Below, piece after piece: positions 18,988 through 56,040 of a stretch of DNA of 64,000 nucleotides (the first letter of the stretch is position 1; each line of letters opens with the position of its first letter). The position numbers and the translations under genes were made by a program. The stretch is from Mytilus californianus (lineage: Eukaryota). The notes below the pieces were generated by a model. It did not search any database and was not told where the DNA came from. It saw nothing but the letters and a program-made list of their open reading frames with translations. The DNA lies in contig NW_026262582.1 in assembly GCF_021869535.1 (NCBI RefSeq), positions 53,568,001-53,632,000 on the forward strand, in the 5' to 3' direction.

Positions 18988-19293
18988 CTTTCTGTTCCCG
19001 GCAGTAAAACTGTTCCGTCTCAGGAGATGGTTCGCTGGCTCCTTCGTCATTGACAGCTCTCACTCTGATACGATATGGAATATCTTCAAACAAGTTATTA
19101 ATTCTGTACTTTGTGTCTGCTATTGGTACTTTGTTAATTGGCATCCATGTTCTACCGGCAACATCTTGACGTTCTAACATGTAACCAATGATTGGTGAAC
19201 CTCCATCATGTTCTGGTGGTTGCCATGACAACTCAACAAATTTGGGTCCAAGTGCTGTGATTTCTGGTGCACTAGGTGGTGCTCCTGGACAAT
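18988..19293 (-). CDS. Exon: Fn3-array domain 46
   Basis: 306 nt; CPGAPPSAPEIT...CREQK. Confidence 0.9.
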
Positions 19294-19595
19294 CTAAGAA
19301 GACAAACAAATTGTATCACAAAAACTTTTAAAACATTTCATAAACATATTTTAATTCCCAGTAAATTCTACATTATTCTTTTTTTCCTACATGTATACAA
19401 ACTTTTAAACAGATTTCATAACTTCACACATTATTAATCTACAGTTCATTTCAATATTACCAAGGTTCTGTTTTAGTCAGAATCTTCATTTAAATACTTA
19501 TGTGAGAGGGGGGATTAACTTGGGATTCACTTGGAGAATTACAATGCTACTGTCTCACTCAAAATTGTGAATGTAATAGTTTATTTTAACATTAC

Positions 19596-19895
19596 CTTTT
19601 CTTCCTTTGAGTTCTACTGGTTTCTTTAATTCAGCTGGACTACTGACACCAGTTGAATTTTCTGCAAACACACGGAAAAAGAATGTGCCTCCTTCTGGTA
19701 AATCACTAATATGATGGCTCTTGATAAGAGGAGGTACGCGAGTAACACGTTCCCAGTGTTCACTGTCAGGTGTACGTTTCTCTATCGTGTAACCAGTAAG
19801 TCCTTTCTTTCCAGAATCTGGGGCTTCCCAGGTTAAAGTCAAAGAGTCCTTAGTTACATCTTTCACTCTTAATGATGTTGGAGGTGATGGTAGCT
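19596..19895 (-). CDS. Exon: Fn3-array domain 45
   Basis: 300 nt; LPSPPTSLRV...LKGRK. Confidence 0.9.
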
Positions 19896-20180
19896 CTATA
19901 AAATAAAATTTTCAGTCAATTTATTGAGTAATAAAATTAGTCACAATAATTAAAATCAAATATTGGTTTTACAACTAACAATCTTAATTAAGAAATTCAT
20001 GAGTTTAATGAAAATGTATTTACTTGAAAATATTTCTAGTAATTAACCTACCATCAATAGAAAAAGATTCTAAAATTTAACATCTTAAATCAGAAAATAT
20101 GAATCCAGCTGTTTACACCATTTAGTTGATAGAAACCAAAGAGTCGACGTTAGGGTTAAATCAATTGTTTGAATACATAC

Positions 20181-20486
20181 CCATAACTTTCTTGGGAGCA
20201 ACCATTAGGTCCGACTCTAATGGTTGACTTCTTCCATAACGGTTTTCAGCATACACTCTGAAAGCATAGTCTTTATTCTCTGTTAAACCAGTCACTGTGT
20301 AGTCTGTAGCAGTTCCTCTGGTGTTTGCAACATGGAACCAGGTGTGTCTGGTACCTTCACGTTTCTCTATAGAATATGATGTGACAGGTGATCCACCATC
20401 AGTTGTAGGAGGCTTCCAGTCCAAGGTCACACTGTCCTTGGTAAGGGGTTTAACCTTCAATGGACCTTTGGGTTGACCTGGTGGTC
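20181..20486 (-). CDS. Exon: Fn3-array domain 44
   Basis: 306 nt; GPPGQPKGP...PKKVM. Confidence 0.9.
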
Positions 20487-20641
20487 CTGAAAATCAAAAG
20501 TAAATGTAAAGCATCAAGGTGGTGAAGTCTTGGACATTATTTCTGATCTCCATATTTTGTTTTTGTAATAAATAACATTACTGATACTCAAAATTTAAAT
20601 GCAAAAAGTAAAATGAAAACAATTGAAATGTGATAACATAC

Positions 20642-20947
20642 CATATTTACTCTTTGGAGCAATTGCTTGGTCATTTTCCAAAGCAGGTCCAATTCCAGCC
20701 TCATTTTCAGCCATGACACGGAAATAGTAATCTTTCTTTTCTATCAGGTTGTCAACATCTGCAGACAGTGTATCTGGTGGAAGTCTGGCAACTCTAAGCC
20801 ATCTTGGAAGTTGAGCTTCACTTTTTTCAACAATGTAAGCTGTTAAATTTGATCCACCATCTTTTTCTGGTGGTTGCCATGATAACTTAACATGATCTTC
20901 TGTTATATCTGATACTCCAAGTGGTCCTTTTGGTTTAGATGGTTTTG
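20642..20947 (-). CDS. Exon: Fn3-array domain 43 (A); absent from the ORF track
   Basis: 306 nt; KPSKPKGPLGVSDITEDHVKLSWQPPEKDGGSNLTAY...PKSKY. Confidence 0.88.
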
Positions 20948-21379
20948 CTACAAAAGATGAAAATGGAAATGTGTTTTCATAAAGACTTCAGTAAAACAAT
21001 TTGCTTTTTGGAAAAAAGGTGTTTCTCTTTATGTTCAATTTTTTCATTGATTTTTTTAATACTAGATTAATTGTAAATAGCATAATTTTTTTAGCATCTT
21101 TAACTGAAATACTTTACCCTTAAACATGGTACTTGTATGATAGAGGAACGTGGAGGCTTCTATAGCTCATAATTTAAGATACTCCAGCAAGCATCTAGAT
21201 GTAGAACAACAATAAAAGCAAAGATCCTTTAATAATTGGTTAGTTCAAAGTATTGAATTATTGGATAACATGATTATTTCATGCACAGAAAACCCTGTAT
21301 ACTTTTTCTATAATTTTGTTACATTTCAACCTTGATTATTTTTTTATTACAGTTTTAAGCATATACTAATAATACTGAC

Positions 21380-21682
21380 CAATGACTTTCTTTGGTTGTA
21401 TAATAGCCTTTATTTCAGCAGGTTCTCCTACACCCACTGAGTTCTTTGCCTTGACTCTGAACATGTATTCATTATCTGTTAACAGATGTTTGGCTTTGTA
21501 TATATGTACTGTACTTCCAACATCCTTGACCTTAGTAAAGTCGCCAAATTTGTCATCTTTCTGTTCAATGATGTAACCATTGACCATAGCACCACCGTCA
21601 GATTTTGGTTTCTTCCAGCGGATTGTGATGGAGTCTTTTTCAATAGCCATGGTTTCTAATTTCTCAGGTGGTGATGGACGTT
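21380..21682 (-). CDS. Exon: Fn3-array domain 42 (D-like)
   Basis: 303 nt; ERPSPPEKL...PKKVI. Confidence 0.9.
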
Positions 21683-21888
21683 CTATAAAATATGAAATAG
21701 GGTCATATTATTTATAACTGAGAGCAAAGTATGGATATTTAATACCATCTCATTCAACCTGTGTCATTTACAAAAGTTCTGACCATGGTAAAAAATATTA
21801 TAAGTAATATGTTACTATGAGTCATATCATTCCTTTATTTTATCTGCTAAATTAAAAACGAAATTATTTTGAAAAAAAGACTACATAC

Positions 21889-22191
21889 CCAGTGGTCTTT
21901 CTGGAACAGCTGGTTTGTCAATGACAGCAGGTTCACTCAATCCTTCAGCATTTTCTGCATAAACACGGAAGATATATCCTCGTCCCTCCAGTAGATTTTT
22001 GATAGTATGCCATGTGACATCAGGTTCTACCCTGGTTACTCTGATCCACTGAGATCTGCCTGGTTCCTTCCTTTCTATTGGATAACCAATGATTGGAGCG
22101 CCACCATTAGATTCAGGTGGAGACCATTCTAAGGTCACACTGTCTTCAGTGACCTCTGTTACCTCAAGGTCTTTTGGTACTGATGGTACAT
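21889..22191 (-). CDS. Exon: Fn3-array domain 41 (B)
   Basis: 303 nt; DVPSVPKDL...AENAEG...PERPL. Confidence 0.9.
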
Positions 22192-22598
22192 CTTAAAAGT
22201 GAAAACATAAGTAGTTACTACTTAAAACAAATTTATAGACTGAATGTGTATATGTATAATTTTAAATTTAACAACATAATTCATATATTGCATTTCTACC
22301 TAATATGAAGAAGAATTCAGACCTAAATTTATTTTGGATTTTTTTTTCATTTGTTTGGATCAAGTGTCAGTTTTCACTTTTTATATCAATCATATTGTAG
22401 TCAGTCTTATTGCTCAGGAAAACCAAAGTATGTGGGGAAAATCTCAGCACACTCACACTACTACACAAGTGGGTGATCTAGTTCACCTTACCATAATTAC
22501 AAATGGCTAGAACTTACTCAGCTTGGGTTACTATGTTGCTTAATTGTACAAATAACTAGTAAAATCTGAATTAAAAGTTATCTAGCATTCTCCCTTAC

Positions 22599-22904
22599 CT
22601 ATATCACTCTTAGCAATTACTGGTTCTGGTAGTTCTATTGGTTCACTAGCTCCAAGTTTGTTTTCAGCGTAAACTCTAAAGTTATATTCCCGTCCTCGGG
22701 TGAGTCCAGTCACTGTGTAATCAGTGACATCTGGTGTCAGTCGTGTAGCTCTCGTCCAACCTCCTACTTTGTTGTCAAACTTTTCTATGATGTATCCTGT
22801 TAATGGACTACCACCATCATATTCAGGTGGTTGCCATGACAATGAAATTGAATCTTTCTTGATATCATAGGCTTTAAGAGGTCCTTTGGGAGCATCTGGT
22901 GTTT
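22599..22904 (-). CDS. Exon: Fn3-array domain 40 (A)
   Basis: 306 nt; ETPDAPKGP...AKSDI. Confidence 0.9.
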
Positions 22905-23361
22905 CTAAAATATAAATAAGCTATGTCTTATGGTTAACCATTGAATTTGAATAACAATATGAGGATGTTATTTTTTTTTTCAGATTTTGAAATAATATAA
23001 TTTTTGTGTTTATGAAGACATGATCTTGTCATTTATTATATTTTATGTTTTTTTTTGTCATTTTAGGGACTTTTGTATTGATGGCAGATCTTCATTTATT
23101 CCTTACTCCTCTAAACTTAAAAGCTTAACATATTATATATAGACAATTGTCTTTTGCCCCCAAAGACCCTATGGTTTTTTGTGTCTTTGGGTTGCTATCT
23201 TATTGATTCAAACCCAACTCTTCCTTTTATTCATATAAAGCACTTATACAGCTTTTCTAATTTCAGCATATCTGATGTTCTACAAATGAAAATTCTATTC
23301 TTAAAACAAGAAAACAGTGAAACATATAAATGCAGCCTAACAATTTAATATAATTACAAAC

Positions 23362-23664
23362 CTAAAGGTCTCATTGGTCTTATTGATTTGTCCAAGTTGG
23401 TAGGACGACCTTGACCAATGTCATTTACAGCACTGATACGGAACATGTAATCAACACCTTCTTCTAGATCTTGTATTGTTTTCTGACTGACTTTGGATGG
23501 TACATCAGCTACTACTGCCCATTTTCCAGTTCTTCCATCCTTGGCCTCTATGATGTATTTCTTGACAGGGGAGCCACCGTCATCATTGGGCGCACTCCAA
23601 GTCAAAGTGACAGAGTCTGGAGTAACATTACTAGCCTTGATTTTGCCTGGACTGCCTGGTTTCA
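23362..23664 (-). CDS. Exon: Fn3-array domain 39 (D-like)
   Basis: 303 nt; VKPGSPGKI...PMRPL. Confidence 0.9.
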
Positions 23665-24140
23665 CTGAAAATAAAATATTATGTGTCATTTCATTTTGCA
23701 GGTTCAAATGTAAATAAATAAATGACTGTTAGGTGACCTTCAATCATTCATATGTTATAAAAAGGATTTTTTTTAGCCAAGTATTGATTCAAAGTCTCTT
23801 ATTAAAGATCATGATTAATGGAGGAAATTAATTTGACACAATTATAAACCTTAATCCAACTAAAAAGGTCAGAACATGTCTTCTCAGTGATTTTATCATT
23901 CATAGACATGTATTCATATTGAGAACCACAAAAATAGAATTGAAAGTAATTTGTACTCAATTTTTCACGATTTTTACTCATAAAATTTTTATGCCTAGAG
24001 TTGCAGATCTATTTGAGAAGAATGGCAACCATTAGAGTAGAGCTCCTTTGATATTTACCAGTATAATTTTTTTTAAGTTTATACAACAAAAACTTTAACC
24101 CATATCTATTTTTCTACAATCCAAGGGAGATTATCATTAC

Positions 24141-24446
24141 CTGGAGCTCTTCTTGGTGTTACAGGTTCTGTAGTCTCCAATGGCTGACTTCTTCCTTCAT
24201 CGTTTTCCGCTACAACTCTGAACATGTAATCATTGCCCTCATTCAACTTATCAAGGGTCAATGTATGTATTGTTGGACGTACTGTGTCCACTTGGTACCA
24301 ATTGTTTCTCTTCAAGTCACGTTGTTCTACCACATAACGTTTGATAGGTTTACCGCCGTCACTTTTTGGTTGTTTCCAACTGAGTTCAGCAGACCTGGCA
24401 GTGACATTAGATACTTTAAGTGGTCCTTCAGGCACATCTGGTGGAT
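24141..24446 (-). CDS. Exon: Fn3-array domain 38 (B)
   Basis: 306 nt; DPPDVPEGP...AENDEG...PRRAP. Confidence 0.9.
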
Positions 24447-24765
24447 CTGCAAGAAAAAAAATTGTAAAATGAACATCTTGCTTTTTCATGGCTTACTAAC
24501 ATTACTGTTCACATCCCTTATTAGAAATCTGGTTGATAATTGTCTCATTGGCCCCATCTTCCTATTTTTGTATTGGTTTATCCTGAAACAATGGGAAACC
24601 ACTTGCATTTTCAATCATAAACTGACCTTGGATCATTTTGACTTTTTCGGCTACAAAAACAGTTTACCCCTACTGCTTTCTTTATTTGAAGTAAATCTAA
24701 GAACTTGACGATTAATTGCTTTGTTTTGACATGATATTACCTTAGTGTTGAAAGTGATAACTTAC

Positions 24766-25071
24766 TGAATGGATTCTTTGGAATCACTGGTTCTTGTCCT
24801 TCCAATGGTTCAGATAAACCAGCTTTGTTCTCTGATTTCACACGGACAAAGTATTCTGTCTTCTCTATTAAGTGTGTCATGGTGTATCTAGTTGTAGTAG
24901 ATTTAATCTTTTCAAGGTAGCTCCAGGTGGTCTTGGTTTTCTCTCTCTTCTCCACAACATAGTGTGTGACAGGGGAACCACCATCATCTTCACTTGGTTT
25001 CCAAGATACTGTAACAGATGACCTTTGGATGTCCTTGAACTCTAATGGTCCAACAGGAGGTGAAGGTGGTT
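24766..25071 (-). CDS. Exon: Fn3-array domain 37 (A)
   Basis: 306 nt; EPPSPPVGP...PKNPF. Confidence 0.9.
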
Positions 25072-25364
25072 CTAAAAATAGTTTCATAAAATTTTTCATC
25101 ATTATGAACACTAAAAATTCCTGATATCAAATTTCAACATGATACAGGATGGAAAAATGGATGGACAGGCACACAGACTGGAAAATTTAATAGCTCCCGA
25201 TATAGTAGGCAGGGCATAAAAATGTGACTGAAAATTTCTACCATATCATCATACATACAACAGATCAACTCATTTATGCTAAAATTGGAATGCAAAACTT
25301 ATTATTATTTAGAAGATTTCTGTCATTTTACAGTAAAAAGTCATCTGATGATAAACAAACTTAC

Positions 25365-25670
25365 TGATTGGTTGTTTTGGTGAGTAAGTTTTGTCAGTCT
25401 CAGCCATATCACCTTTACCAACTTCATTTTCAGCAGCCACACCAATGTAATATTTATTCTTAGGTTCCAGCTTAAGAATGGTGAAGTAATTTTTGAATGT
25501 ATCAACAGTTGCTACATTTATCCATTTGTTGTCTGTAGATTCTGATTTGATGTAAATTTGATATTTCTTAACTCTGGATCCACCATCTTTACTAGGTGGT
25601 CGCCATTCAATGGTGATTTCATTTTCATCAATTTTGGTGACTTTGAGGTCTTTGGGTGGACCAGGACGAT
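25365..25670 (-). CDS. Exon: Fn3-array domain 36 (D)
   Basis: 306 nt; DRPGPPKDL...IGVAAENEVG...PKQPI. Confidence 0.9.
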
Positions 25671-25914
25671 CTATAAAACAGTTTTGACAGATCAATATTC
25701 TAATGTATCTGAAATCTTGTTTCTATTTACTTTTATAATAAATTTGCTTTAATAAAGACCGTTAAATGTTTTTCTTGTTTCATTAGAATATTGCACATAA
25801 TTGTCAAGAACTTGATTTAAGATTACTCATCAATATATGTATTATAAATAATAAATTTCAGTTAATTTTAATACACTAAAAGTTTCACATATTACAACAT
25901 GTAATGATTCTTAC

Positions 25915-26220
25915 CAAGTTTCTGTTTTGGAGTAACTGTGTCATCTCCATTTAATGGTGGACTTTCTCCCTCAGCATTGATTGCCTTGATTCTAAAGATA
26001 TATTCATTATCCACCACTAATTTTTTGGCAGTGAATTTGGTAGTTGTTGCATCTACAGTTCCATGCTTTCCCCACATTGAACGTCTGGATTCTCTGATCT
26101 CTATGGTGTAGTTAGTTATCGGAGTTCCTCCATCAGATTTTGAAGGTTTCCATGTCAATTCTACAGAATTTTCTGTTAGGTTGGAGAACTTCAAAGGTCC
26201 TTCAGGAGCTAATGGCTTAT
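25915..26220 (-). CDS. Exon: Fn3-array domain 35 (B)
   Basis: 306 nt; DKPLAPEGP...AINAEG...PKQKL. Confidence 0.9.
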
Positions 26221-26593
26221 CTGTTGTTTAAATTAGTTCATTGTTTAAGATTTTCAGGCATGCAAGATTTGGAGGGATTTCATGCCACACTTATCCTTCA
26301 TCGAAGACTGTAACTTGATATATATCAAATGCATATTTTCTGTGATTTTTTCTTGTTGTTGGGTTTGTTTTCATTCATATTTATAACTGATTTATGTATG
26401 CAAAGAAAAATTATTCAAACTGAATAAACCTTAAAAGCTAAAAAAAAGAAGTATTTTTTTAATTCATTGTTTATATATTGTGTTCCCATATTTATTTCAG
26501 TTAACAAAAGTAAATCCTAAAAAAACAAAATGAAGTGTTTATCATACAAAAGTCGTTATCTGAAAGTTGCTGTATATAAAATTTGCTTCTTAC

Positions 26594-26899
26594 CAAATGG
26601 ACTCTTCATCAAAATTGGTTTAGGCATTTCTAGAGCATCACTTTGTCCATGTTTGTTAATAGCAAACACTCGGAAGAAAAATTCTTTTCCTTCATCCAGA
26701 TTTTTCACAAGAAGTTTCAAAGTGCTGCCATCTGTTTTTTCAACTCTAGACCACATAGATCTCTGAACATCTCTCTTCTCAATAAGATATTCTGTGATTG
26801 GTGAACCACCATCTTCTTGTGGGGGTTGCCATGACAACTCCACAGAGTCACGTGACAATATTTTTCCAATCAAAGGATGTGTTGGTGGGCCAGGAGGAC
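26594..26899 (-). CDS. Exon: Fn3-array domain 34 (A)
   Basis: 306 nt; GPPGPPTHP...MKSPF. Confidence 0.9.
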
Positions 26900-27332
26900 C
26901 TGAAACAAATTTAAAACTTATGAGGTCTAAAAAGGAAAAAAAATATAAAAAGAATTTAACAAGAAAATAGCAGAATGGTCCTTCCCTAATGAAGTTGATC
27001 AAGACGGTCGTAACTAATTGCATGATAATTAAAAAAAAAATATTTTTATTGGTAAATATTTCAAAAGATAAAGGATTATTTCATCTTTTCTGCTTGATTA
27101 TGGAAATTTTTATGGAAACATGTTTGATATAAATGGAAATTTAGATCTGTTACAGAAACTTCATGATATATTAAAGATTTATCAAAAGTCATATATACTG
27201 AGAAAACTTTTGCAGTTCCTTGATTTGAAGAGGCAGGTAACAGGTTAAAGTTTTGTCAAGAAAAATCTTAAATATCTATGTCTGATCATAATTTATAACA
27301 TGAATACCAAAGAAAAAAAGAAAGCTACCAAC

Positions 27333-27632
27333 CTTTTGGTTTAGTTGGAGTTACTTCCCCTGATTCAAGTGGTTTACTATCTCCAACCTTGTTTATGGCT
27401 ATAACTCTGAATCTATAAGTTTGTTCAGCTGTCAAATTACTGACTTTTGTCTTAGTAGTTTGACCATCACATATAGTGACCTCTGTCCAGATCTTGCTGT
27501 CAATGGTCAGTTCAAGTCTGTATCCAGTGATTGGAGCTCCTCCATTGTTTCTTGGTGGTGACCACTCTAATGTGACACCAGTTTCAACAATGTGAGTGAA
27601 TTTGATTGGTCCAACTGGCATATCTGGCACAA
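27333..27632 (-). CDS. Exon: Fn3-array domain 33 (C)
   Basis: 300 nt; VPDMPVGPIKF...PTKPK. Confidence 0.88.
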
Positions 27633-28143
27633 CTGTTTCAAAAAAGAGCCAAATGATAACCATTTAATATATAATCATGCTAACAATTACAAGATGTGTA
27701 GGATGTCAACATTAAATCTAACAAAAATTCATAACTACATATCTTAAAATCTAAAAGAATTTCCATAATATTTAAAAGACTTTACAGATAACTCTATTCA
27801 TATACTAGTAACTATAAATCTGCCAATCTCACTACTTTCCAAGATGGTGTAACAGGCACATGCTCCGCTTTATATATCACTGTCACAGGTCTCTTATTTT
27901 GACCCCTTTATAGTGAGTATAATATTTTATACCCTGCTGGACTATACAGAAATATGTATTATAAAAACTCTGAGAAGCTGAAGGGTAATGAATACATATT
28001 CATTATTTACTGCCTTTATTATTCTTACTCTGATTTATACAATGCATTTTCACAGAATCATTTTTTCCCCTGCCAAATATTTAATTTCCATAAAATTTAA
28101 AAAGAATTGTATTTTATTCAAAATAATTAAACTGACAACTTAC

Positions 28144-28446
28144 TTGGTTGTTTTTTAAGTTGTATAACTTGTGAAAGTTCAACAGGTTTGCTGGAGCCCT
28201 CGTCATTTTCTGCTGACAATCTGAAATAGTAGTCCACACCCTCACGTAGTCCTTCAACAGTAAACTCTGTTGTTTGGGCCTTGATTTTTCTCTCTTTGAC
28301 CCATGGTCCAAATTTCTTTTCCTTCCTCTCAAGGAAGTAGATCTTGATTGGTAATCCACCATCTGATTCAGGTGCTTTCCATGTCAAAGTAACTGTTGTT
28401 GCTGTAGAATCTTTGACACTGAAATCTCTTGGTGCTGATGGTACAG
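28144..28446 (-). CDS. Exon: Fn3-array domain 32 (B)
   Basis: 303 nt; AVPSAPRDF...AENDEG...LKKQP. Confidence 0.9.
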
Positions 28447-28897
28447 CTAGAAATACAAAATGTCACAATTTATATTTATTTTTCAATGTTCTGCCAGTTG
28501 TTTATTTTCCACATATGATTTGTTCGAAAAATCTTATATTTAATTCTTGACTTTAGAATTGTTATCTAAAAGTTTGTAAGAAGGTATTATCTAATTTTCT
28601 CTGTTCACACAAACTTTGGAAACTTAAAATTACAAAATTAAAGCAACAACCACTCCCAATTCCATGCCACTCACTGTCTATTATGTAAATGGAAAATCAA
28701 ATGATACAGTAAATTCATTTTACGGTTTACAGGTAAAAATGGGAGATTAATGCAATTGCAAAAATTTTGTGAAGGATATTCGCAACTGAAATTATAAATA
28801 AAAGTTTTTATTATTGCAAACCTGATACTGTAGCTTTTTTGCATTAAAAAAAATATTGCAATAATTTCTGAATTTACAGTATATGAATGAAATTAGA

Positions 28898-29172: not shown

Positions 29173-29259
29173 GATAAAAATTATTACGAACCAATTAATC
29201 AAAGATTTAAAATAAGACCCAGATAAAATAAGGAGGAAATACAAAAAAACTCCACTTAC

Positions 29260-45868: not shown

Positions 45869-46171
45869 CTGGCTTCTTGTGTAGAGTCACAGGAGACTCT
45901 AGCTCTGCAAGTTGTCCTGGGCCAATTTTGTTTTCAGCAGAAACTGCAAATTGGTAAGGTTTGTCTGTTCTAAGATTTTTGGCTGTGTAGGATGTGTCAA
46001 ATGATCCAACACTCCCAATCTTTTTCCAGTCTTCAGAATCATCCTCTTTCATGAATATCTGGTATCCAGTGACCTTTGATCCACCAATGTCCTTTGGTGC
46101 TTTCCATTCCAAGGTCACCTTGTCAGTGTTCTTAGTCTTGATCTTCAAATTTTCTGGTGCTTGTGGTGCCT
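45869..46171 (-). CDS. Exon: Fn3-array domain 9 (D)
   Basis: 303 nt; EAPQAPENL...FAVSAENKIG...HKKP. Confidence 0.9.
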
Positions 46172-46589
46172 CTGCAAATAAACCCTAGTTTTTTTATTTC
46201 TTGTTTTCACTTGGCTCCAAATTTCATTCAAAAAATGGAGAAAAAAAGAAATCAAAAGTATTTTACTGCACTCTTAATAGATTGAAAGCAGGCCAATAAT
46301 TAACAATATTGACAAATGTATTTCAAATTTATTTCCATAAACAATTACCAGTACATCAGTATATCTTTTACACTAATGATATTTTCATGGGCAGAGAAAA
46401 TGTTGCATTTTAGAAGGGATTTCTTTTGGGGGAGGAGTTCAATTAAAAGAAATTATTTCATTTATGTACATTGAAAGGAGTTCTTTTTCCTAATGGCAAT
46501 CTAATGTTGACCTCTAGTTGTCTTTTTGTGTTAATGTGTTGACGTCTCATTGATTTATGCCCAAACATCTCCATTAGATTCATACTGAT

Positions 46590-46927
46590 AAGTAGGAGGA
46601 GGGTTGAGCGCTCACAAACATGTTTAACCCCGCCGCATTCTTTATGTGCCTGTCCCAAGTCAGGAGCCTATAGTTCAGTGGTTGTCGTTGGTTTATGTCT
46701 GTCATATTTGTTTTTCGTTAATTGTTTTGTTATAAATTAGGCTGTTAGTTTTCTCAATTGAATTGTTTCATATTTTTCATGTCAGGGCCTTTTATAGCCG
46801 ACTATACGGTATGGGTTTTTGTCATTGTTGAAGGCTGTAGGGTTGCCTATAATTGCTTACATCCACTTTATTTGAACATTGATGGATAGTTGTCTCATCA
46901 TCAATCATACCTCATCTCCTTATTTTT
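46590..46927. mobile_element. Related SINE-like repeat (opposite orientation)
   Basis: CCTGTCCCAAGTCAGGAG ... GATAGTTGTCTCAT...CATACCTCATCTCCTTATTTTT; same family motifs as 51947, reversed. Confidence 0.7.
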
Positions 46928-46995
46928 ATAATGTTACTGTAACATAAATGAGATTGTAAACATGGTAAAATACAATATCATAAAGGATATCTGAC

Positions 46996-47301
46996 CTAGT
47001 TGTTTTTGAGGTCTGACAGATTTGACTGATTCCAATGGAGCTCCAGGTCCTTCTTCATTGACAGCTGAAACCCTGAAGTAATAGTCACCACCTTCCAAAA
47101 GTTTGTCAGCAATAAAGATTGTCTTGTCTGCACTGACATCTCCACATTTGGACCATGTTGTACGTTTAGAGTCTTTGGCCTCTATGATATAATTAGATAT
47201 TGGTAGACCACCATCCTTTGTTGGCGGTCTCCATGAAAGTGTGACTGAATCCTTGGTTATGTCAGAGAATTCTAATGGTCCTACTGGTTTTCCTGGTTTG
47301 T
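46996..47301 (-). CDS. Exon: Fn3-array domain 8 (B); absent from the ORF track
   Basis: 306 nt; DKPGKPVGPLEFSDITKDSVTLSWRPP...AVNEEG...PQKQL. Confidence 0.88.
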
Positions 47302-47786
47302 CTATTGAAAATATTATTAATTTTTCATGTTTATTTGTTTAATTTTGTTATATGATTCTCCAATTTGGAGATAAACATTGGATTTCAGGAAAGCTAACAA
47401 ATCTCCAGCTCAAAGAAAAATATATTGAAACAAATGTTTAATGCATTATTTACACTAAGAATGAATGAAATCATTAGAATCTGTTATTATGATTATTTGT
47501 TCTAATAAAAATTAAAAAATTAAAAAAGATATTAATTGCATACCAAATTTTAAGAAATACTTCTGGATACACCATAAAAATTTACAACCAGACAGATTGT
47601 TGCATATTTTTCAAATTGAGCGTTTTCTTTTACTGGAACAAGTACAAGAATTCTCTACCACCAAAAGACAAAATATACGAGGTAGAAATGTTAAAGACAG
47701 CACAAATTTGATTTAAAAATCTTGAAATGACTTGAACTAAATATCTAAACATATTGGATTCATTACAAATGAATGTTGTAACATAC

Positions 47787-48092
47787 CAAATTCACTCTTA
47801 GGAACAATTATTTTGTCTGTCTCTAGAGCTGGACTTCTTCCAAGTTTGTTTTCTGCTGTCACATGGAACATGTAATCTGTTCCTTCTGTCAAGTTCTTTA
47901 CTGTGTATGTTGTGTCATCAGGACTGATCTTATCACAGAGGGACCAGGTTGTACGTCTACCTTCCTTCTTTTCTATGATGTAGCCAGTCAGTGGAGATCC
48001 ACCATCTTTAGATGGAGGTTTCCATGACAACTTGACTGAAGTTTTAGTGATTTCTGATGTATCTAATGGTCCTACTGGTTTTTCTGGTGGTC
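47787..48092 (-). CDS. Exon: Fn3-array domain 7 (A)
   Basis: 306 nt; GPPEKPVGP...PKSEF. Confidence 0.9.
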
Positions 48093-48367
48093 CTGATAAA
48101 GAAAAAGAATATACAATTGCATGTGCATTCAAAAACTTTATTTTGTTGAGAAAAAGATTATTCACAGCAGTTTGTTTATTGGACTTTTAATTAATAACTT
48201 TCCACATACATTGTACTAAAAAACTCATAATCAAATAAAAAAACAGAAACAAAAAAAGCAAAAGTACTTTCTGAATGTTTCCTTAAATGAGAGGTTGCAC
48301 TGTTGACTGTCAACTAATTTTTGCAATTACAAATATTGCAATAGATTTGGCTTGTTAGATATCATAC

Positions 48368-48670
48368 CTGCAGGTTTCTTGGGAACTACTGTAGATTCAA
48401 GTTGACACATATCACCAAGACCTACAGAGTTCTCAGCTGCAACAGCAAATGTGTACTCAACTCCATCCTTTAGTTTGGCAACCTTGTAGCTATTATCAAA
48501 TGGTTTTAATGTAGCTACAGTGGTCCAGTCATCTGATGGTCCCTCCTTCATCTTGACAACATATCCTTTAATTTTTTCCCCTCCAGTTGTTGTGGGTGGT
48601 GTCCAGTCCAATGTAACATAGTCTGGACCTACTTTGGCAGTTGTCAGCTTTTCTGGTGGGCCTGGTTTTT
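48368..48670 (-). CDS. Exon: Fn3-array domain 6 (D)
   Basis: 303 nt; EKPGPPEKL...FAVAAENSVG...PKKPA. Confidence 0.9.
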
Positions 48671-49050
48671 CTGTAGAACAATTAATACATTGTAAAACAA
48701 AAGTCTGTTCATCTTTTTGTTTTAAAATTTTATTTTTACTGAAGGGAATGTTTTATGAGAAGGAAATTTTACAAGTTTGAGACACCTAGCTGATCAAACC
48801 AACTTTCCAGTGTTTAGTGCCTGTACAAAGTCAGAAATATGACATTCATTACTTCATTTGTTCCAATTTCTCAATATCTCTGGACTTCAACTTCTAATGT
48901 TCTCTTTGAATAAAACAATTTTAAAATACATACATTATTAGTTTTTGAGTCATGGATTACAACATTTGAAACTGATTTAGCAATAGTCTGTGTCTTATAT
49001 TCCTTCCTATTCATATGCTTAAAAGCCAAAGTTTACCTAAAATTACATCA

Positions 49051-49246
49051 TACTGTGGATTCATTTATTTTCATGGATTGAGGAAATCTTGCATCTTCGT
49101 GGATATTTGATTTCGTGGCTTTGTCAAAGTCTACATACAACATAATAGTAAGTTTGTACTTCAATGAACATTTAAATTCGTGGTTCACTTGTACCAACGA
49201 AATCCACGAAAATTGGTATCTCATGAATAATAATGAATCCACAGTA
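49051..49246. mobile_element. Tc1/mariner-type MITE
   Basis: TA|CTGTGGATTCATT ... AATGAATCCACAG|TA: inverted ends with TA TSD. Confidence 0.85.
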
Positions 49247-49272
49247 TACCATTTAATCTAGTTTTAACCTAC

Positions 49273-49578
49273 CAATAACTTTTCTTGGTTTGGCCATATC
49301 AGCTGATTCCAATGGGGATCCAGATCCTTCACTGTTGATGGCTGTGACCCGGAAGTAATAATCTTGACCTTCCTTTAGATCTTTAACATTAAACTTGAAA
49401 GAATTTCCATCTACAGTTCCAGCCTTTGTCCATGTTGACCTATTGGCTGGTCTATATTCAATCTGGTATTTTTCAATTGGAGCACCACCATCTTGTTCAG
49501 GTGCCTGCCATTCAATGTCAGCAGAACTCTCAGTGACATTACTGATTGATATCGGTCCAACTGGTGCTGATGGTTTGG
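49273..49578 (-). CDS. Exon: Fn3-array domain 5 (B)
   Basis: 306 nt; AKPSAPVGP...AINSEG...PRKVI. Confidence 0.9.
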
Positions 49579-49850
49579 CTGTAACAGAAAACATTTCCCA
49601 TGTAAATTTTAAAGAGTTGAGAAATTCATTTACAGGGTAATAACTAACACATGTTTTACATCTTTAACAAATTAATGTTCATTTTTATAACGTCCACAAA
49701 CAAACTGACTATTTCAAATCATTAGATTACATTACAATGAATCCATTACAGTAGAATTTTGATAATGTTATACTGTTATTATATAATATCCACACTTTCA
49801 ATTTCCATATTGAAAAGTATAGGATTTTACAGAACAGTGGATAAACTTAC

Positions 49851-50156
49851 AGAATGGACTCTTTGGCAATACAGATTTTTCAGCTTCTAATGGCTCCCCA
49901 AGTCCAGATTTATTTTCAGCACGTACGCGGAACATATATTCTGTTCCTTCTTGTAATTTGTCTACTTTAAGCTGATTGGTTTCACCATCAACTTTTTGGA
50001 CAGGTGTCCATGTTTTGCGTTTTTTGTCTTGCTTTTCAATGACATAGGAAGTGATTGGACTTCCACCATCTTCCTTTGGAGGTGACCAGTGAAGTGTGAC
50101 TGAATCTTTTCTGACATCAGTCATTTCAAGTGGTCCCATTGGTTGTGATGGTTTGC
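49851..50156 (-). CDS. Exon: Fn3-array domain 4 (A)
   Basis: 306 nt; GKPSQPMGP...PKSPF. Confidence 0.9.
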
Positions 50157-50375
50157 CTAAAATAAAAAAAATATTTATATTTACTAAATATTGTTTTACC
50201 AAAATAATGCAAGCTTCATAATTTTTAGAAAGTAAAGATATCATTACTTTAAAGAAGAAGCGATCCTCAAATTAAATCAAAACTAAAAGCAGGTTAGTCA
50301 AAAACGTTACTTTTCAAACTTGAAATGAAGAGAAAGAAACATGGACAATGCTTATGATTGAAGTATATAAATTAC

Positions 50376-50669
50376 CAATTGGTTTCTTTGGTATAACTAC
50401 ATCAGATACCAAGAGCTCTCCTTCACCGACGGCATTGATTGCTGCTACACGGAAGTAATATTTCTGTCCATCTTTAAGACCCTTGGCTGTATATTTGGTA
50501 GTATCAGAAATATCAAGTGGTGTCCATGTTTTACCATCTTCTGATATCTCAAGTTTGTAAGATGTAACTGGTGAGCCTCCATCTTTCTTTGGAGGAGACC
50601 AGTTTAAGGTCACTTCATCACCAAGTACATTGGTGAATTTGATTGGTCCCACTGGCTTAGCTGGACAAG
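50376..50669 (-). CDS. Exon: Fn3-array domain 3 (class C)
   Basis: 294 nt; CPAKPVGPIKF...EISEDGKTW...PKKPI. Confidence 0.88.
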
Positions 50670-51270
50670 CTATGAAATGTATAAATAAGTATATAAATGT
50701 GTCATGAATTTTTGTCAGTAAATCATTATAGATTTGGGCTTAAAAATGATTTTCTATGTTACATAAAAAGCTGGTATAAAACAAGAAGTGTTTAATATGA
50801 CAGTTGTTCCATCATTTGATATGCCAAATATCATAACACAAGCTGCTAAGTATTCAAAACTATTTGTTCTGTACTAATTATCATGGACTTCTAAGGTAAA
50901 GGTGAATTAACAAACTCAAATAAATGCAGAATTTTTTAAACAATAAAAACAAAGTTTCCACAAAATAGAAATTTTTCTTGATCTATGAAATTGGCACCAA
51001 TACAAATAAATGTATCCACATTATTTTTCACTTTCTATTTTTGCCAATTCCCTGGAGTTCAGTACATTTGTTATTTCACACTCCTTGTACAGGAACCAAT
51101 AAGCAAAGGCTTAGTTTGTTGATTTTAAAACGTTAATTCTCTTTGAATTATCCACAAATGAGAATAATTCAAGCATTTTCATAAATTATAACCTCACTAA
51201 AATTTTGAAAATTTCTATTTATGAATACTCGATAGATTCACAATGTATTAATTACAATTTTTAAACTTAC

Positions 51271-51576
51271 TTGGTGCTTGTTTTGGTTTGATTTCTGTGT
51301 CAGTAACAAGAGGCTCACTTGCTCCTTCAGCATTAACAGCTAAAACTCTAAACTGGTATGGAGTACCTTCTATCAACTTCGGAACAACAAAACTCAAAGT
51401 TTTGTCATCAACACTTCCAACCTTAGTCCAAGATAAACGTCTCTTGTCATATTTCTCAATAATGTATTCTTTGATTGGTGAGCCTCCATCTAATTTTGAT
51501 GGTTGCCATGACAATTTAACACTATCAGCTGTGATGTCAGAAGCAGTCAATGGTCCCTCTGGTTTTGATGGTTTTC
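51271..51576 (-). CDS. Exon: Fn3-array domain 2 (class B)
   Basis: 306 nt; GKPSKPEGP...AVNAEG...PKQAP. Confidence 0.9.
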
Positions 51577-51946: not shown

Positions 51947-52245
51947 ATATAAGAAGATGTAGTATGAGTGCCAATGAGACAACTCTCCATCCAAGTCACA
52001 ATTTGTAAAAGTAAACCATTATAGGTCAAAGTATGGCCTTCAACACAGAGCCTTGGCTCACACCGAACAGCATGCTGTAAAGGGCCCCAAAAATGACTAG
52101 TGTAAAACCATTCAAACAGGAAAACCAATGGTCTAATTTATATAAAAAACATGAAACGAGAAACACTTATGAACCACATCAACAAAAGACAACCACTGAA
52201 CATCACGTTCCTGACTTAGGACAGGTGCAAACAAATGCAGCATTC
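51947..52245. mobile_element. SINE-like interspersed repeat
   Basis: Shares ~150 bp with the 36578 copy; continues to CCTGACTTAGGACAGG. Confidence 0.85.
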
Positions 52246-53406
52246 TTCGTTGGACAATCGCAATACTCCATTTTTTGAAAATTTTATTGTTTTTAGAAAC
52301 AGTACAAAAATAAAGAATAAATGAGTTGATGTAGTCAAATTATAATTTTTTAATCCAAATTCTAATCAAGACATTTTAATAGCAAGCATCGAATAAATTT
52401 GGTGTGGCCAAATAATAACTAAATACTTTTTTTTAGGGTTTTAATGATCATTTTATACTTACATTGATAACCAAAAATATTAAGACAAATGTTATAGAAG
52501 AACTCTAAACTAAGATTCAAGTACTCATCCAAACCCCAAAAAGTTTATATTAAATCATAAAGATACCAGTCAGTGCTTACAACATCAGTGTCGGGAGTAA
52601 TCTTCATGGGTATGCTCCAGACAAAATGTTTGAGAGGCAAAGTACATGGAAAATATTGGAGCTGTCAAAACCAGAAAGGAAACAAACAAAAAAGTCATAT
52701 TAAACCATCTGAAGTCAATTTTACAACTGGGATTTGCAACCTTCTAGCACAATATGATTTAGAAAGTGAAAATTTACAATGAAATGTTATGGTTTTAGAA
52801 ATGAATTTTTAAGAATAAGAAGGACATTTAAATAAAGGACTGGTGACAAGTGATGGCATTAGTGAACATGGACTATTACACTAAATATAAATATCCTTTG
52901 GATGACATGAGTTTCTTGCAAGCTATAACCAACAAGGTATTATAATTATTTGACTTAGGAGTTATTCTTTCAATCATGGATGTTGATGCAGTGTAAAGCA
53001 ATCACCAATCAATCAATCAATCAATTCAATCATGGATTTTATTTTCACTGTCAACCAAACATATAAAATCCTGTGTTTCATACAAAATTAGGAAAAGAAG
53101 AAAATTTTGTGAAATTTCTGTGTCTAGCACATGATTCCAAGTCATTGACCCCCCCTACCAAATTCTATAATTGGAAATAATCCAAATCTAAATAACATCT
53201 TATTAGCTATAAATTTATAAAGGCATAACTAATAATTGTTTGCTCCCTTATCATTTGGTCTCTGCTGGATAATTGTCTCATTTGCTATAATACCACATCT
53301 CCTTATTTTTATATGCAATGTATAACTTTTTGTTTGTACATCTTTTGTCTGGAGAGTCCAATGTTGGTTGTTGTGTGGTCTGTTATACTTTCAAATATTG
53401 TTTTTA

Positions 53407-53598
53407 AGTTCATGGTATCCTTTTTTATGGTTCATTGTATCTTCTTTTTAGTTCATTGTATCCTTTTTTTAGTTCATGGTATCCTTTTTTTAGTTCATGG
53501 TATCCTTTTTTATGGTTCATTGTATCTTCTTTTTAGTTCATGGTATCCTTTTTTATAGTTCATGGTATCCTCTTTTTAGTTCGTTGTATCATTTTTTT
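53407..53598. repeat. ~21-23-bp minisatellite x~9
   Basis: AGTTCATGGTATCCTTTTTTT variants; explains the ORFs at 53313 and 53497. Confidence 0.9.
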
Positions 53599-55734
53599 AT
53601 ACATTTTATTATAGCCCTTTTTTGTGAAGTCACAGAATTCAAAGCACTCCAATGTTTCATGCAAAATCTTGACAATCAACAAACAGCATGCTTTCAAACT
53701 AACACAAAACAATTAAAATGTTATACTTTATTTTATTTAACATTTTATTGATTAAAATGTATACAATTCAACATTAATATAGTAATTAATCTTAAAAATT
53801 TCACATAACAACTTCATTTAAACCATTCATTTGAATATTCAAAAACCCATGCACAAGATCTCTTGGCCAAGATTATCTTCAAACAATTTATCAGAACAAT
53901 ATACTTAGCACTGGAATGATATGAAAAAACAAATTGAGCACTTAAAACACAATCAAGTTAAGAAAATTAAATATGGTAATGGTATCTTAGTAAAATAAAT
54001 GAAACATGTAAAACAAATTTTGTATGGGGAAAAGATTGTTATTTCTTAAGGCATACAATTTTGTTCTCAAGAATTAATTTTTGAGAAAAAAAACCCACTT
54101 CTTTTACACTAAGAACAATACAAAATTTCTTGTTTCAACCCTTATATGAATGGTTTGAAAAAATGAACAAAACTTTGTCATGCATTTGATCAAGTATACA
54201 ATATATTAGTAACTAGTAACATTCTATTAATTAACAATATCTAACTTCAATTAACTAGTAACTAACTACTATTACTAAAACATATCACATTCAGCATGGA
54301 GATTCACAACCTTATACATTTTGATTACTAAAAATTCATAATATTACTTCTGATTATAAAAAAAATATTTCAACGAAAGGAATGTTCAACAATTTTCAGC
54401 AGTTAATGATAAAAATATAATAAAAATATATAGTATTCATAATTATAATATAACACATGGTTACAAAAAAATTAAAACGTCATTTATGTAAAAATCACAT
54501 TATGATTGATATGTAAATAAATCTATTCATCACATATTTTGCTATGAGTATGATATTCAAAATTAAAAAGAAATTAAAAACTTGAATTGTTGATTAAAAT
54601 GGACCAAATGGATAATGTTGTGGACCATGTTCTTAGATGAGAACATGATTCCGAAAAATGCCCATTTTAAATTCGACATAATGAAAGTTTATCATTTAAT
54701 AATGTAATGTCTAACAGGGATGAATTTTGAAAGGAATGCATTTTATTCCATATGAAATGTAATGTGTTATATCAAATTTATAATGGCAACCTTGTTTGTT
54801 TATTTTCCAGTCATGGACTATAAGTCTATTTTCTTATTATGCACCTTTTTTATACAATTGTAAATGCAATAAATTGTCCTTTAATAGGTTGCTATGAGAT
54901 CCATACCTAAACACCACAGACAGATTAAGGACTTTCTTTAACTTAAGGATCATATATATAAGGTCATACATGTACTACATGAACCAACTCTTCTAACCTT
55001 TACCTTATCTCTTATCCTAAACCTAATTTTAACACTAAGCTAGAGATAAAATGTTCTAATTAAAAACTATCAAAATTAAAAAAAAATGTGGGTCCCTATG
55101 TAAAAGAATGCCCATGGGTGACACAGTGAAACCAATTGTCAAGTTGAAAATAATAGGATAGTTTATACATTTGGACGGGTTATGTTATTGAAAATCATTC
55201 AAATAGGTTTATATTTGATTCACACACATAAGGCACATGCTTCGATACTTATGAATATGTAAACAATTTAATTAAGATAATCATGGTCAAATTTTGGCTC
55301 TGATTTTAAATCATGATATGTCAAATTATGTGGTCTTCTTTCACAGTATTTTTGTTCTCAGATGTAATAGAATTGAGACTTCTATCAATTGTTCACAAAT
55401 CTCAATTAACTCCAAACTCTATAACTAAACTCTTTAGAAGAGTAACTTTTGAGAGCTTAAACAGTGAAAAAAGACCACATTTATCAATGGCATAACAGTA
55501 TGTAATTTAGGTTATAGAAATTGAAAACATTTATTTACATTTTTGCCATTTCTCGTCACCGATAAAAAGGAGCAAGTAATTTGTGACCAAAATGTCAAGC
55601 TCCATAAATTACACACTGATATATGTTTAAAATTAACAATAAAACAAAAAGCATTCACAATTTTTTTCAAGACATCATGCTGTTAATATTCAACATCAAA
55701 CTTTTATCAATTCGGGTTGCATATCCAAACCTAC

Positions 55735-56040
55735 CAAATGGACTCTTTGGAATAACTGGTTCGGATGTCTCCAAAGGTTTGGAAACTCCAATGTCATTTT
55801 CAGCAGTAACTCTAAACATGTATTGTTTTCCATCCATTAATCTACTTGGTGTAATAGTTGTGGTTGGAGCTTTAACAGATCCCACTTTTGTCCATTGTGA
55901 ACGGTTTTGTTCACGCATGTCTACATTGTATTGTTTAATGTCTGATCCACCATCATCTTTTGGTGGTTGCCATGACAGTGTGACACTATCTTTGAGAAGG
56001 TCTGTGACCTCTATTGGTCCTTCAGGGGGACCAGGGATGT
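55735..56040 (-). CDS. Exon: Fn3-array domain 1 (class A)
   Basis: 306 nt, phase 1-1; DIPGPPEGP...PKSPF. Confidence 0.9.

What the first reader, a model, noticed from the sequence alone, without database searches (positions are those of the whole stretch)
18988..56040. 46 consecutive Fn3 domains with no intervening Ig (~4,670 aa) in a titin-family kinase
Forty-three exons (40 single, 3 double; 14,013 nt) encode only Fn3 domains. I found no Ig-like exon in any intervening intron. In vertebrate titin A-band super-repeats Fn3 runs do not exceed three, and twitchin/projectin use Fn3-Fn3-Ig (established). A pure Fn3 filament of this length, roughly 180-200 nm at ~4 nm per domain, is an architecture I do not recognise. 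It could be a scaffold or ruler for the very large paramyosin-core thick filaments of molluscan muscle (inference).
Basis: partly seen in the sequence, partly recalled or inferred. Interest (0 to 1): 0.88.

Follow-up and report, generated by a model that had tools for sequence, protein, structure and literature searches.

The report
All-Fn3 rod in mollusc titin-like kinase
A giant muscle-type kinase gene of a mollusc really does encode 46 fibronectin-type-III domains in a row with no immunoglobulin domain between them, a conserved but so far undescribed rod built from three-domain units that grows by whole triplets.

Summary
On the minus strand, 43 phase 1-1 exons (18988-56040, 14,013 nt, no stop) encode 46 back-to-back Fn3 domains. 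All 43 exons match Pfam fn3. No Ig exon is hidden in the introns, while the same scans find the flanking Ig exons.

The window reads FF-II-FFF-II-[F x46]-II-F-kinase-Ig(n). The gene is not classical twitchin. Its kinase forms a 100/99-supported clade with unnamed or auto-named gastropod models: Batillaria KAK7507540.1 (49 Fn3), Elysia GFS00827.1 (45) and RUS90387.1. Aplysia twitchin kinase is only 58% identical over the one exon compared, against 77-79% for those models.

New here:
- The tract has a three-domain super-repeat: two titin-A-band-like Fn3, then a divergent, shorter one.
- Its last 22 domains are positional orthologues of the gastropod ones.
- A close relative lacks F17-F25, so this lineage gained nine domains. 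Another species repeats one triplet four or more times.
- Exons evolve under purifying selection (dN/dS about 0.15).

So the architecture is real and old, and it is already in databases. I found no description of it in the literature I could search. A thick-filament ruler role and the extent of exon skipping remain untested. The scan also noted this same stretch as s1-328186, not on other DNA.

The parts
18988..56040 (-). The whole all-Fn3 tract: 43 phase 1-1 exons, 46 Fn3 domains (F01-F46), 14,013 coding nt, about 512 kDa
55735..56040 (-). Exon for F01. It is an 'after-Ig' type Fn3 and is set apart from the rest by the 4.2-kb intron 51577-55734. The orthologous locus L003 has a roughly 10-kb intron at the same place.
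45179..51576 (-). Exons for F02-F10, collinear with the gastropod and other related arrays
33638..44884 (-). F11-F25. This is an ancestral six-domain unit (F11-F16) plus nine lineage-specific extra domains (F17-F25). Copies are 79-97% identical. The block includes the three double exons 43775-44380, 39849-40454 and 38248-38871.
18988..32914 (-). F26-F46. Together with F25, these are positional orthologues of Batillaria domains 28-49 and Elysia marginata domains 24-45.
57384..58872 (-). Ig pair directly upstream of the tract. One Ig is split over two exons (open stretches 58654-58872 and 58012-58281). The other is a single phase 1-1 exon, 57384-57671.
59052..60740 (-). Three Fn3 exons (FFF) upstream of that Ig pair: 60438-60740, 59776-60078, 59052-59357
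60994..63367 (-). Further upstream: an Ig pair (60994-61311, and a split Ig at 61442-61744 plus 61987-62121) and two Fn3 exons (62505-62810, 63065-63367). The gene runs off the window.
12386..13645 (-). Ig pair directly downstream of the tract. It follows a 5.4-kb intron (13603-18987) that carries a transposon, according to earlier notes.
11920..12243 (-). Pre-kinase Fn3 exon; classifies as the 'pre-kinase' Fn3 type of twitchins
7306..11729 (-). Kinase domain and regulatory tail. The exons lie in open stretches 11571-11729, 11155-11355, 10452-10682, 10099-10368, 9311-9685 and 7306-7560.
2..6915 (-). At least seven Ig domains after the kinase, several split over two exons. The gene runs off the window.

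Best explanation
What it is. The region encodes the central rod of a giant titin-family kinase of a mollusc. The gene is a paralogue of classical twitchin. Its orthologues are the uncharacterised gastropod models KAK7507540.1, GFS00827.1 and RUS90387.1.

Where the tract sits. Twitchins end ...FFF-II-FF-II-F-kinase. This protein has 46 Fn3 domains in place of the 'FF' pair, with no Ig and no linker between them.

How it is built. The tract is a three-domain super-repeat. Positions 1 and 2 are well-conserved Fn3 of the type that follows an Ig in twitchins. Position 3 is a divergent Fn3, 1-2 residues shorter, of the type that precedes an Ig.

How old it is and how it changes. The tract is ancient: its last 22 domains are one-to-one orthologues between this animal and gastropods. 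It is under purifying selection. It changes length by duplications that add multiples of three domains, so the register is kept.

Inferred function. The domains are closest to the thick-filament-bound Fn3 of titin's A-band. The rod, about 180-200 nm long if fully included, most likely lies along the myosin/paramyosin thick filament as a periodic scaffold or spacer that sets the position of the kinase end.

Shown and inferred. Shown: exon structure, domain identity, absence of Ig, orthology, periodicity, triplet-wise growth, selection. Inferred: thick-filament binding, a ruler role, and inclusion of all 46 domains in one protein.
For: - Exon model and open frame.
- Domain identity: Pfam fn3 on 43 of 43 exons; 46 contiguous domains.
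- No Ig in the introns, with positive controls.
- In-frame flanks.
- Architecture against 116 family members.
- Gastropod orthologues have 49 and 45 Pfam fn3 stretches and no I-set.
- Kinase plus tail is 70% and 66% identical to those models and 56% or less to all others.
- Kinase clade has 100/99 support and is separate from twitchins.
- Aplysia twitchin kinase 1KOB is 58% identical, against 77-79% for the gastropod models.
- Periodicity: lags 3 to 24 give 0.40-0.48 identity against 0.36-0.37. Permutation test 0 of 5000, also without the recent copies. The same periodicity is in Batillaria and Elysia, and the same register shows more weakly in the annelid Owenia.
- Fn3 class by position in the triplet.
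- Positional orthology of F25-F46.
- Growth in multiples of three: L006 and L001 lack F17-F25, and L004 repeats one triplet at least four times.
- dN/dS 0.13-0.15.
- Nearest solved structures are titin C-zone chains of cardiac thick filaments (8G4L at E 8e-138, 8Q6T), titin A77-A78 and MyBP-C.
Against: - There is no transcript, protein or localisation evidence for this gene in this animal. All exons are phase 1-1, so any subset could be skipped.
- The gastropod models are automatic predictions and could include every possible exon.
- Three domains at about 3.9 nm each, as in titin's C-zone, give about 12 nm, not the 14.5 nm myosin repeat. A simple one-triplet-per-crown model is therefore not supported by arithmetic.
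- The backbone of the kinase tree is unresolved, so relations to TTN-1 and to chordate titin are open.
- Domain numbers differ between species (45, 46, 49; about 37 inferred for a close relative), which argues against one strict length.
Confidence: 0.62

Rival explanations
1. Splice-selectable cassette store. The 43 symmetric exons are a reservoir from which each muscle type includes only a subset, as with titin's I-band Ig and PEVK exons. The full 46-domain rod would then exist rarely or never, and rod length would be tuned by splicing. This rival is compatible with the structural findings. It concerns only how much of the tract is used.
For: Every exon is phase 1-1. Length changes keep the three-domain register. 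F01 is isolated by a large intron here and in L003. Scallop muscles are reported to express several 'titin' and twitchin isoforms that differ between fibre types (PMC5963113).
Against: Each domain is individually conserved: positional orthology over 22 domains and dN/dS about 0.15. Three independent gastropod models include 37 to 49 domains. This window shows no sign of mutually exclusive exon logic.
Confidence: 0.3
2. Elastic spring rather than thick-filament scaffold. A linker-free poly-Fn3 chain could act as an extensible tether that unfolds and refolds under load, as in fibronectin or tenascin. It might connect thick filaments to dense bodies in obliquely striated or smooth mollusc muscle.
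For: The tract is a uniform chain of one fold with no Ig. [quoted passage not shown]
Against: Known sarcomeric springs use Ig and PEVK, not Fn3. The domains are closest to thick-filament-bound titin A-band Fn3 and MyBP-C. A conserved super-repeat register is typical of filament-binding regions rather than of entropic springs.
Confidence: 0.12
3. It is the classical mollusc twitchin gene. Under this reading, the published 24 Ig + 15 Fn3 Mytilus catch-muscle protein would be a short isoform that skips most of the tract.
For: The ends match a twitchin layout (FFF-II-...-II-F-kinase-Ig n). Elysia chlorotica RUS90387.1 has six Ig, a linker, then three Ig after the kinase. From my memory of the Mytilus work, that resembles the placing of its D2 site.
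Against: The Aplysia twitchin kinase (PDB 1KOB) is only 55-58% identical to the Elysia and Batillaria models and 58% to the window. It is closer to leech, nematode and insect twitchins (62-65%). The window is 77-79% identical to the gastropod models. The kinase clade lies outside the protostome twitchin clade. This comparison covers 67-68 residues only.
Confidence: 0.05
4. Assembly or annotation artefact. The count could be inflated by mis-assembled repeats or by pseudo-exons.
For: Fifteen of the 46 domains (F11-F25) belong to copies that are 79-97% identical.
Against: The window has no N and no exon carries a stop. The other 31 domains are only 35-55% identical to each other. The order is collinear with four other species' loci and two gastropod proteins. 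The duplicated copies have different introns and one has a 7-residue insert.
Confidence: 0.03

Closest known systems
Uncharacterised gastropod gene models: Batillaria attramentaria KAK7507540.1 (hypothetical protein, partial), Elysia marginata GFS00827.1 ('titin'), Elysia chlorotica RUS90387.1 (hypothetical, partial)
   Same: All have the layout I(n)-FFF-II-FFF-II-F(45-49)-II-F-kinase-Ig(n). Kinase plus tail is 66-70% identical and the kinase clade has 100/99 support. They share the three-domain periodicity and are positional orthologues of F25-F46.
   Different: Domain counts differ (49, 45, at least 37) because each lineage made its own duplications in the middle of the tract. These are automatic predictions with no published description that I could find.
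Twitchin / UNC-22 / projectin, including Aplysia twitchin (PDB 1KOB) and Mytilus twitchin (24 Ig + 15 Fn3, PMC12040844)
   Same: Titin-family giant kinases with the same C-terminal module FFF-II-..-II-Fn3-kinase-Ig(n). Sarcomeric Fn3 and I-set Ig domains. A three-domain periodicity.
   Different: Twitchins repeat Fn3-Fn3-Ig, and the longest Fn3 run is 3 in 107 of 116 proteins scanned. Here the third member of each triplet is a divergent Fn3 and no Ig occurs for 46 domains. The kinase is a paralogue.
Vertebrate titin A-band (7- and 11-domain Ig/Fn3 super-repeats; cardiac thick-filament structures 8G4L and 8Q6T)
   Same: These are the closest solved relatives of the Fn3 domains. Both have a super-repeat organisation and an Ig-Ig-Fn3-kinase module.
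   Different: Titin interleaves an Ig after every 2-3 Fn3, and its super-repeats are 7 and 11 domains long. Here the repeat is three domains, all Fn3.
Nematode TTN-1-type kinases (Trichinella OUC40207.1, Teladorsagia PIO69851.1, Mesorhabditis CAJ0566744.1)
   Same: Nearest rows to the window clade by path length in the kinase tree. The partial Trichinella model reads FFFF-II-F-kinase-IIIII.
   Different: The relationship is unresolved because the backbone is a polytomy. These models show only short Fn3 runs.
Patiria miniata 'titin-like' XP_038047568.1 and its neighbouring models; Owenia fusiformis 'Titin' CAH1802732.1
   Same: Both have long uninterrupted Fn3 runs in titin-family loci. The starfish locus has at least 54 in a row. 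Owenia reads (FFF-II)x10 followed by 14 Fn3, in the same three-domain register as the window's tract.
   Different: In the starfish the run precedes ordinary I-F-F repeats. Its domains are about 51-56% identical at all lags, which suggests recent homogenisation, so it may have arisen independently. The Owenia model is cut before any kinase.

Membership tests
Fibronectin type III domain (Pfam PF00041) | Each unit matches the fn3 profile above the curated cut-off | tested here: met
   43 of 43 exons match, best E 4e-31. 46 domains by local HMM.
Titin-family giant sarcomeric kinases (titin, twitchin, projectin, TTN-1) | CaMK-like kinase with a C-terminal regulatory tail, embedded as Ig-Ig-Fn3-kinase-Ig | tested here: met
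   Exon order. For the one kinase exon searched, the best solved matches are twitchin and titin kinases. Kinase plus tail is 48-56% identical to family members.
Titin-family giant sarcomeric kinases (titin, twitchin, projectin, TTN-1) | Rod built of mixed Ig/Fn3 super-repeats (Fn-Fn-Ig, or 7- and 11-domain repeats) | tested here: not met
   46 Fn3 with no Ig. A super-repeat exists, but it is Fn3-Fn3-Fn3.
Titin-family giant sarcomeric kinases (titin, twitchin, projectin, TTN-1) | Location in the sarcomere, bound to thick filaments | not testable with these tools
   Only homology bears on this: the nearest solved relatives are thick-filament-bound titin Fn3.
Classical twitchin / UNC-22 orthogroup | Kinase orthologous to twitchin kinases (Aplysia 1KOB, C. 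elegans 1KOA) | tested here: not met
   58% identity to 1KOB against 77-79% to the gastropod poly-Fn3 models over one 67-residue exon. 1KOB is closer to leech, nematode and insect twitchins. The clade is separate in the tree.
Classical twitchin / UNC-22 orthogroup | Repeated Fn3-Fn3-Ig pattern upstream of the kinase | tested here: not met
   for twitchins; for the window.
Mollusc poly-Fn3 titin-like kinases (KAK7507540.1, GFS00827.1, RUS90387.1) | Kinase in the same well-supported clade | tested here: met
   Support 100/99 and 74% maximum identity in the tree alignment. 70% and 66% identity over 336 aa.
Mollusc poly-Fn3 titin-like kinases (KAK7507540.1, GFS00827.1, RUS90387.1) | FFF-II-FFF-II-F(about 45-49)-II-F-kinase layout, with collinear domain orthology | tested here: met
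   Layout. Unique best diagonal for F25-F46: 0.50 against 0.44 or less in Batillaria, and 0.48 against 0.41 or less in Elysia.
C. elegans TTN-1 orthogroup | Kinase orthology | tested here: inconclusive
   Nematode TTN-1-like kinases are nearest by path, but the backbone is unresolved. C. elegans TTN-1 itself was not in the set.

The most novel reading that the evidence does not exclude
The tract defines a third class of A-band titin-family proteins, beside twitchin/projectin and chordate titin. It would be an all-Fn3 thick-filament ruler, ancient in Lophotrochozoa, whose three-domain unit is the binding module for the myosin/paramyosin surface lattice. Gain, loss or splicing of whole triplets would then tune thick-filament length or kinase position between species and muscle types, including the very long paramyosin filaments of mollusc catch muscle.
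Probability: 0.22. Interest if true: 0.8.

Novelty: new variant of a known kind. Interest (0 to 1): 0.55.

Why it matters
Titin's Ig/Fn3 super-repeats are the textbook example of a protein ruler matched to the thick filament. Invertebrates with much longer, paramyosin-cored thick filaments lack a known equivalent.

This gene shows a different solution within the same family: a roughly 0.5-MDa rod of one fold, with a strict three-domain register that evolution preserves while changing its length. That makes several things testable:
- whether Fn3 triplets bind myosin or paramyosin periodically;
- whether rod length tracks filament length;
- whether the kinase is positioned by the rod.

The gene is also easily mistaken for twitchin in mollusc annotation and in proteomic or transcriptomic studies. 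One gastropod orthologue is auto-named 'titin'.

Tried and rejected
The orthologues came only from length-matched searches seeded with a crinoid twitchin and then with the Batillaria model. Those lists are ranked by summed score. Shorter proteins such as Mytilus twitchin, and any bivalve model outside the searched length range of about 4,200-13,500 aa, could not be seen.
- Best-hit mapping of each array domain to positions in reference twitchins gave no clean positional orthology. Class HMMs (after-Ig, before-Ig, middle, pre-kinase) were informative instead.
- I considered that the gene is Mytilus-type twitchin with most of the tract skipped, because the Ig count can be made to fit 24. I rejected this on the Aplysia kinase comparison. 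The Funabara 2003 paper is not held, so the Mytilus sequence itself was not compared.
- A Logan protein of 406 aa (P0366) that might have been spliced-transcript evidence turned out to be an unrelated Ig protein.
- Net charge and pI do not differ between triplet positions.
- I found no transcript evidence for or against exon skipping.
- I did not run structure prediction. Domain identity was already settled, and predicted inter-domain geometry would not be reliable.
- Two Pfam calls failed on size limits and were resent within limits.

Full report
**Observation**

The window is AT-rich (68% A+T) and has no N. Stop-free stretches on the minus strand show a long series of Fn3-like peptides flanked by Ig-like and kinase peptides.

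I modelled the splicing with phase-1 AG acceptors and GT donors. The model gives 43 exons between 18988 and 56040:
- 40 exons of 294-306 nt;
- three double exons: 43775-44380, 39849-40454 and 38248-38871.

The exons total 14,013 nt. Spliced together they give 4,670 codons without a stop.

Exon coordinates, F01 to F46:
- 55735-56040, 51271-51576, 50376-50669, 49851-50156, 49273-49578, 48368-48670, 47787-48092, 46996-47301, 45869-46171, 45179-45478
- 44579-44884, 43775-44380 (two domains), 43191-43496, 42591-42893, 41890-42195, 40918-41223, 39849-40454 (two), 39383-39688, 38248-38871 (two), 37395-37700
- 35418-35720, 33638-33943, 32609-32914, 31994-32293, 31143-31448, 30536-30841, 29901-30203, 29260-29565, 28144-28446, 27333-27632
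- 26594-26899, 25915-26220, 25365-25670, 24766-25071, 24141-24446, 23362-23664, 22599-22904, 21889-22191, 21380-21682, 20642-20947
- 20181-20486, 19596-19895, 18988-19293

A local HMM finds 46 domains that abut one another. Pfam fn3 matches all 43 exons, and no Ig family matches any of them.

**No hidden Ig**

I built an Ig HMM from the gene's own Ig domains and ran it over all open stretches of 20 aa or more on both strands.
- It recovers every flanking Ig exon, including half-domain exons that were not in the training set.
- Inside the array it gives only weak cross-hits to the Fn3 exons.

As a control, Pfam detects I-set in 8 of 9 flanking Ig exons or half-exons. The array is in frame with the Ig exons on both sides.

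**Gene context**

From 5' to 3' the window reads FF-II-FFF-II-[F x46]-II-F-kinase-I(at least 7). The gene runs off both ends of the window.

Reference twitchins scanned with the same HMMs end ...FFF-II-FF-II-F-kinase-IIIII. The tract therefore sits where twitchins have two Fn3. Class HMMs agree with this. F01 is an 'after-Ig' type Fn3 and F46 is a 'before-Ig/middle' type. The flanking domains classify as expected, which validates the method.

**What gene it is**

The exhaustive search with one kinase exon gave only fragments and distant twitchins. Length-matched searches then found annotated proteins with the same architecture:

| Protein | Layout |
|---|---|
| Batillaria attramentaria KAK7507540.1 (7,716 aa) | I x11-FFF-II-FFF-II-F x49-II-F-kinase-I |
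| Elysia marginata GFS00827.1 ('titin', 7,507 aa) | 45 Fn3 in the tract |
| Elysia chlorotica RUS90387.1 (partial) | 32 Fn3, a 96-residue gap the HMM did not assign, then 4 Fn3; nine Ig after the kinase |

Pfam independently counts 49 and 45 fn3 stretches, and no I-set, in the two complete tracts.

The window's kinase plus tail is 70% and 66% identical to the Batillaria and Elysia marginata models, and 56% or less to everything else. In a maximum-likelihood tree the window and the three gastropod models form a clade with 100/99 support. That clade is separate from five others:
- protostome twitchins;
- a nematode TTN-1-like clade;
- a 'titin homolog/MLCK-like' clade, which has its own mollusc member from Patella;
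- ambulacrarian twitchin-like proteins;
- chordate titins.

The backbone of the tree is unresolved.

The experimentally defined mollusc twitchin kinase (Aplysia, PDB 1KOB) was compared over one 67-68-residue exon:
- 58% identical to the window;
- 55-58% identical to the Elysia and Batillaria models;
- 62-65% identical to leech, nematode and insect twitchins.

Over the same exon the window is 77-79% identical to the gastropod models. The gene is therefore a paralogue of classical twitchin. The tree is compatible with that but does not prove it.

**Internal organisation**

Pairwise identities between the 46 domains are raised at every lag that is a multiple of three: 0.40-0.48 against 0.36-0.37. 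The signal survives a permutation test (0 of 5000). It also survives when the recently duplicated middle is left out.

By position in the triplet:
- Positions 1 and 2 resemble each other (0.40-0.43 identity). They score as the Fn3 type that follows an Ig in twitchins.
- Position 3 is divergent even from other position-3 domains (0.34). It is 1-2 residues shorter and tends to the type that precedes an Ig, or lies mid-run, in twitchins.

The same periodicity is present in Batillaria and Elysia. The 14-Fn3 tail of the annelid Owenia model shares the register more weakly. That model reads (FFF-II)x10 followed by F x14.

**Age and dynamics**

A domain-level alignment is collinear with both gastropod tracts. 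F25-F46 have a single best diagonal:
- Batillaria: 0.50 against 0.44 or less for other in-phase offsets.
- Elysia: 0.48 against 0.41 or less.

At least this half of the tract therefore predates the split from gastropods.

F11-F25 consist of an older six-domain unit plus nine extra domains whose copies are 79-97% identical. Other species' loci show what happened:
- A close relative's locus (L006, 63-90% amino-acid identity) runs F06...F16 and then directly F26-F28.
- A more distant locus (L001) does the same.
- The nine extra domains, three triplets' worth, are therefore specific to this lineage.
- Another species (L004) repeats an F08-F09-F10-like triplet at least four times.

Length thus changes by multiples of three domains, and the register is kept.

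Locus L003 is the orthologous 5' boundary (II-FFF-II-F), with a 10-kb intron after F01. Orthologous exons show dN/dS of 0.13-0.15 at dS of about 1.

**Function (inference)**

The nearest solved relatives of a double exon are:
- the titin C-zone chains in cardiac thick-filament structures (8G4L at E 8e-138, and 8Q6T);
- titin A-band tandems (8BNQ, and 3LPW A77-A78);
- cardiac MyBP-C.

Extracellular Fn3 proteins come far behind. Together with the conserved register, this favours a thick-filament-bound periodic rod of about 180-200 nm and about 512 kDa that positions the kinase end.

Several cautions apply:
- Three domains at titin's spacing give about 12 nm, not 14.5 nm.
- All exons are symmetric, so splicing may shorten the rod.
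- Nothing here shows expression or localisation.

**Comparison and novelty**

Of 116 long family members scanned, 107 have a longest Fn3 run of 3 and four have a run of 4. Leech-type twitchins reach 6-7.

Long runs occur in three groups:
- the mollusc orthologues;
- Owenia;
- a starfish locus, where three adjacent NCBI models carry at least 54 Fn3 in a row ahead of ordinary I-F-F repeats.

In the library I could search:
- Mollusc twitchin is described as 24 Ig + 15 Fn3 (PMC12040844).
- One paper states that lophotrochozoans have two titins with 'more mixed' features and draws the C. gigas and M. yessoensis models (PMC12063666).
- No text describes an all-Fn3 tract.

The architecture is therefore real, conserved and present in databases, but apparently unanalysed. 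The three-domain register, the growth in multiples of three and the paralogy to twitchin are the new points.

Noticed in passing
window 10815-11006 (-): An open stretch in the intron between the first two kinase-core exons reads ...NNVIIDFGLAHRYEESK.... It resembles the DFG segment, which is really encoded further downstream at 10099-10368. It is out of order for an alternative exon, so it may be a relic of an exon duplication.
   Followed up: no
L003:114-912 (+), orthologous to window 61610-61742: In another species' orthologous locus, the second half of an Ig exon is present as five tandem partial copies about 158 bp apart. The window has a single copy.
   Followed up: partly
L005:1-58834 (Patiria miniata JADOBP010000004.1, 8740971-8799804): Three adjacent NCBI gene models (1,287 aa, XP_038047568.1 of 4,098 aa, and one of 5,079 aa) lie head to tail; the gap between the second and third is 11 bp. 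Together they carry at least 54 Fn3 in a row followed by I-F-F repeats. They are probably one split gene.
   Followed up: partly
protein cluster of P0157 (member P0341, JGI/IMG): A metagenome copy of the double-Fn3 exon ORF is annotated 'predicted phage tail protein'. This is a eukaryotic exon misnamed in an environmental data set.
   Followed up: no
L004:11055-20381 (+) (ENA ERZ25069866 ctg5112): A three-exon Fn3 unit (F08-, F09- and F10-like) is repeated at least four times in tandem. The array continues beyond the fetched 20 kb.
   Followed up: partly
window 13603-18987: The 5.4-kb intron between F46 and the next Ig exon is the largest in this part of the gene. Earlier notes (s1-328210, s1-328170) place a P-element-like transposon and an excision footprint there. 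I did not examine them.
   Followed up: no
L006:1-439 (+): A hAT-type transposase fragment (weak Dimer_Tnp_hAT match) lies inside the related species' array region.
   Followed up: no
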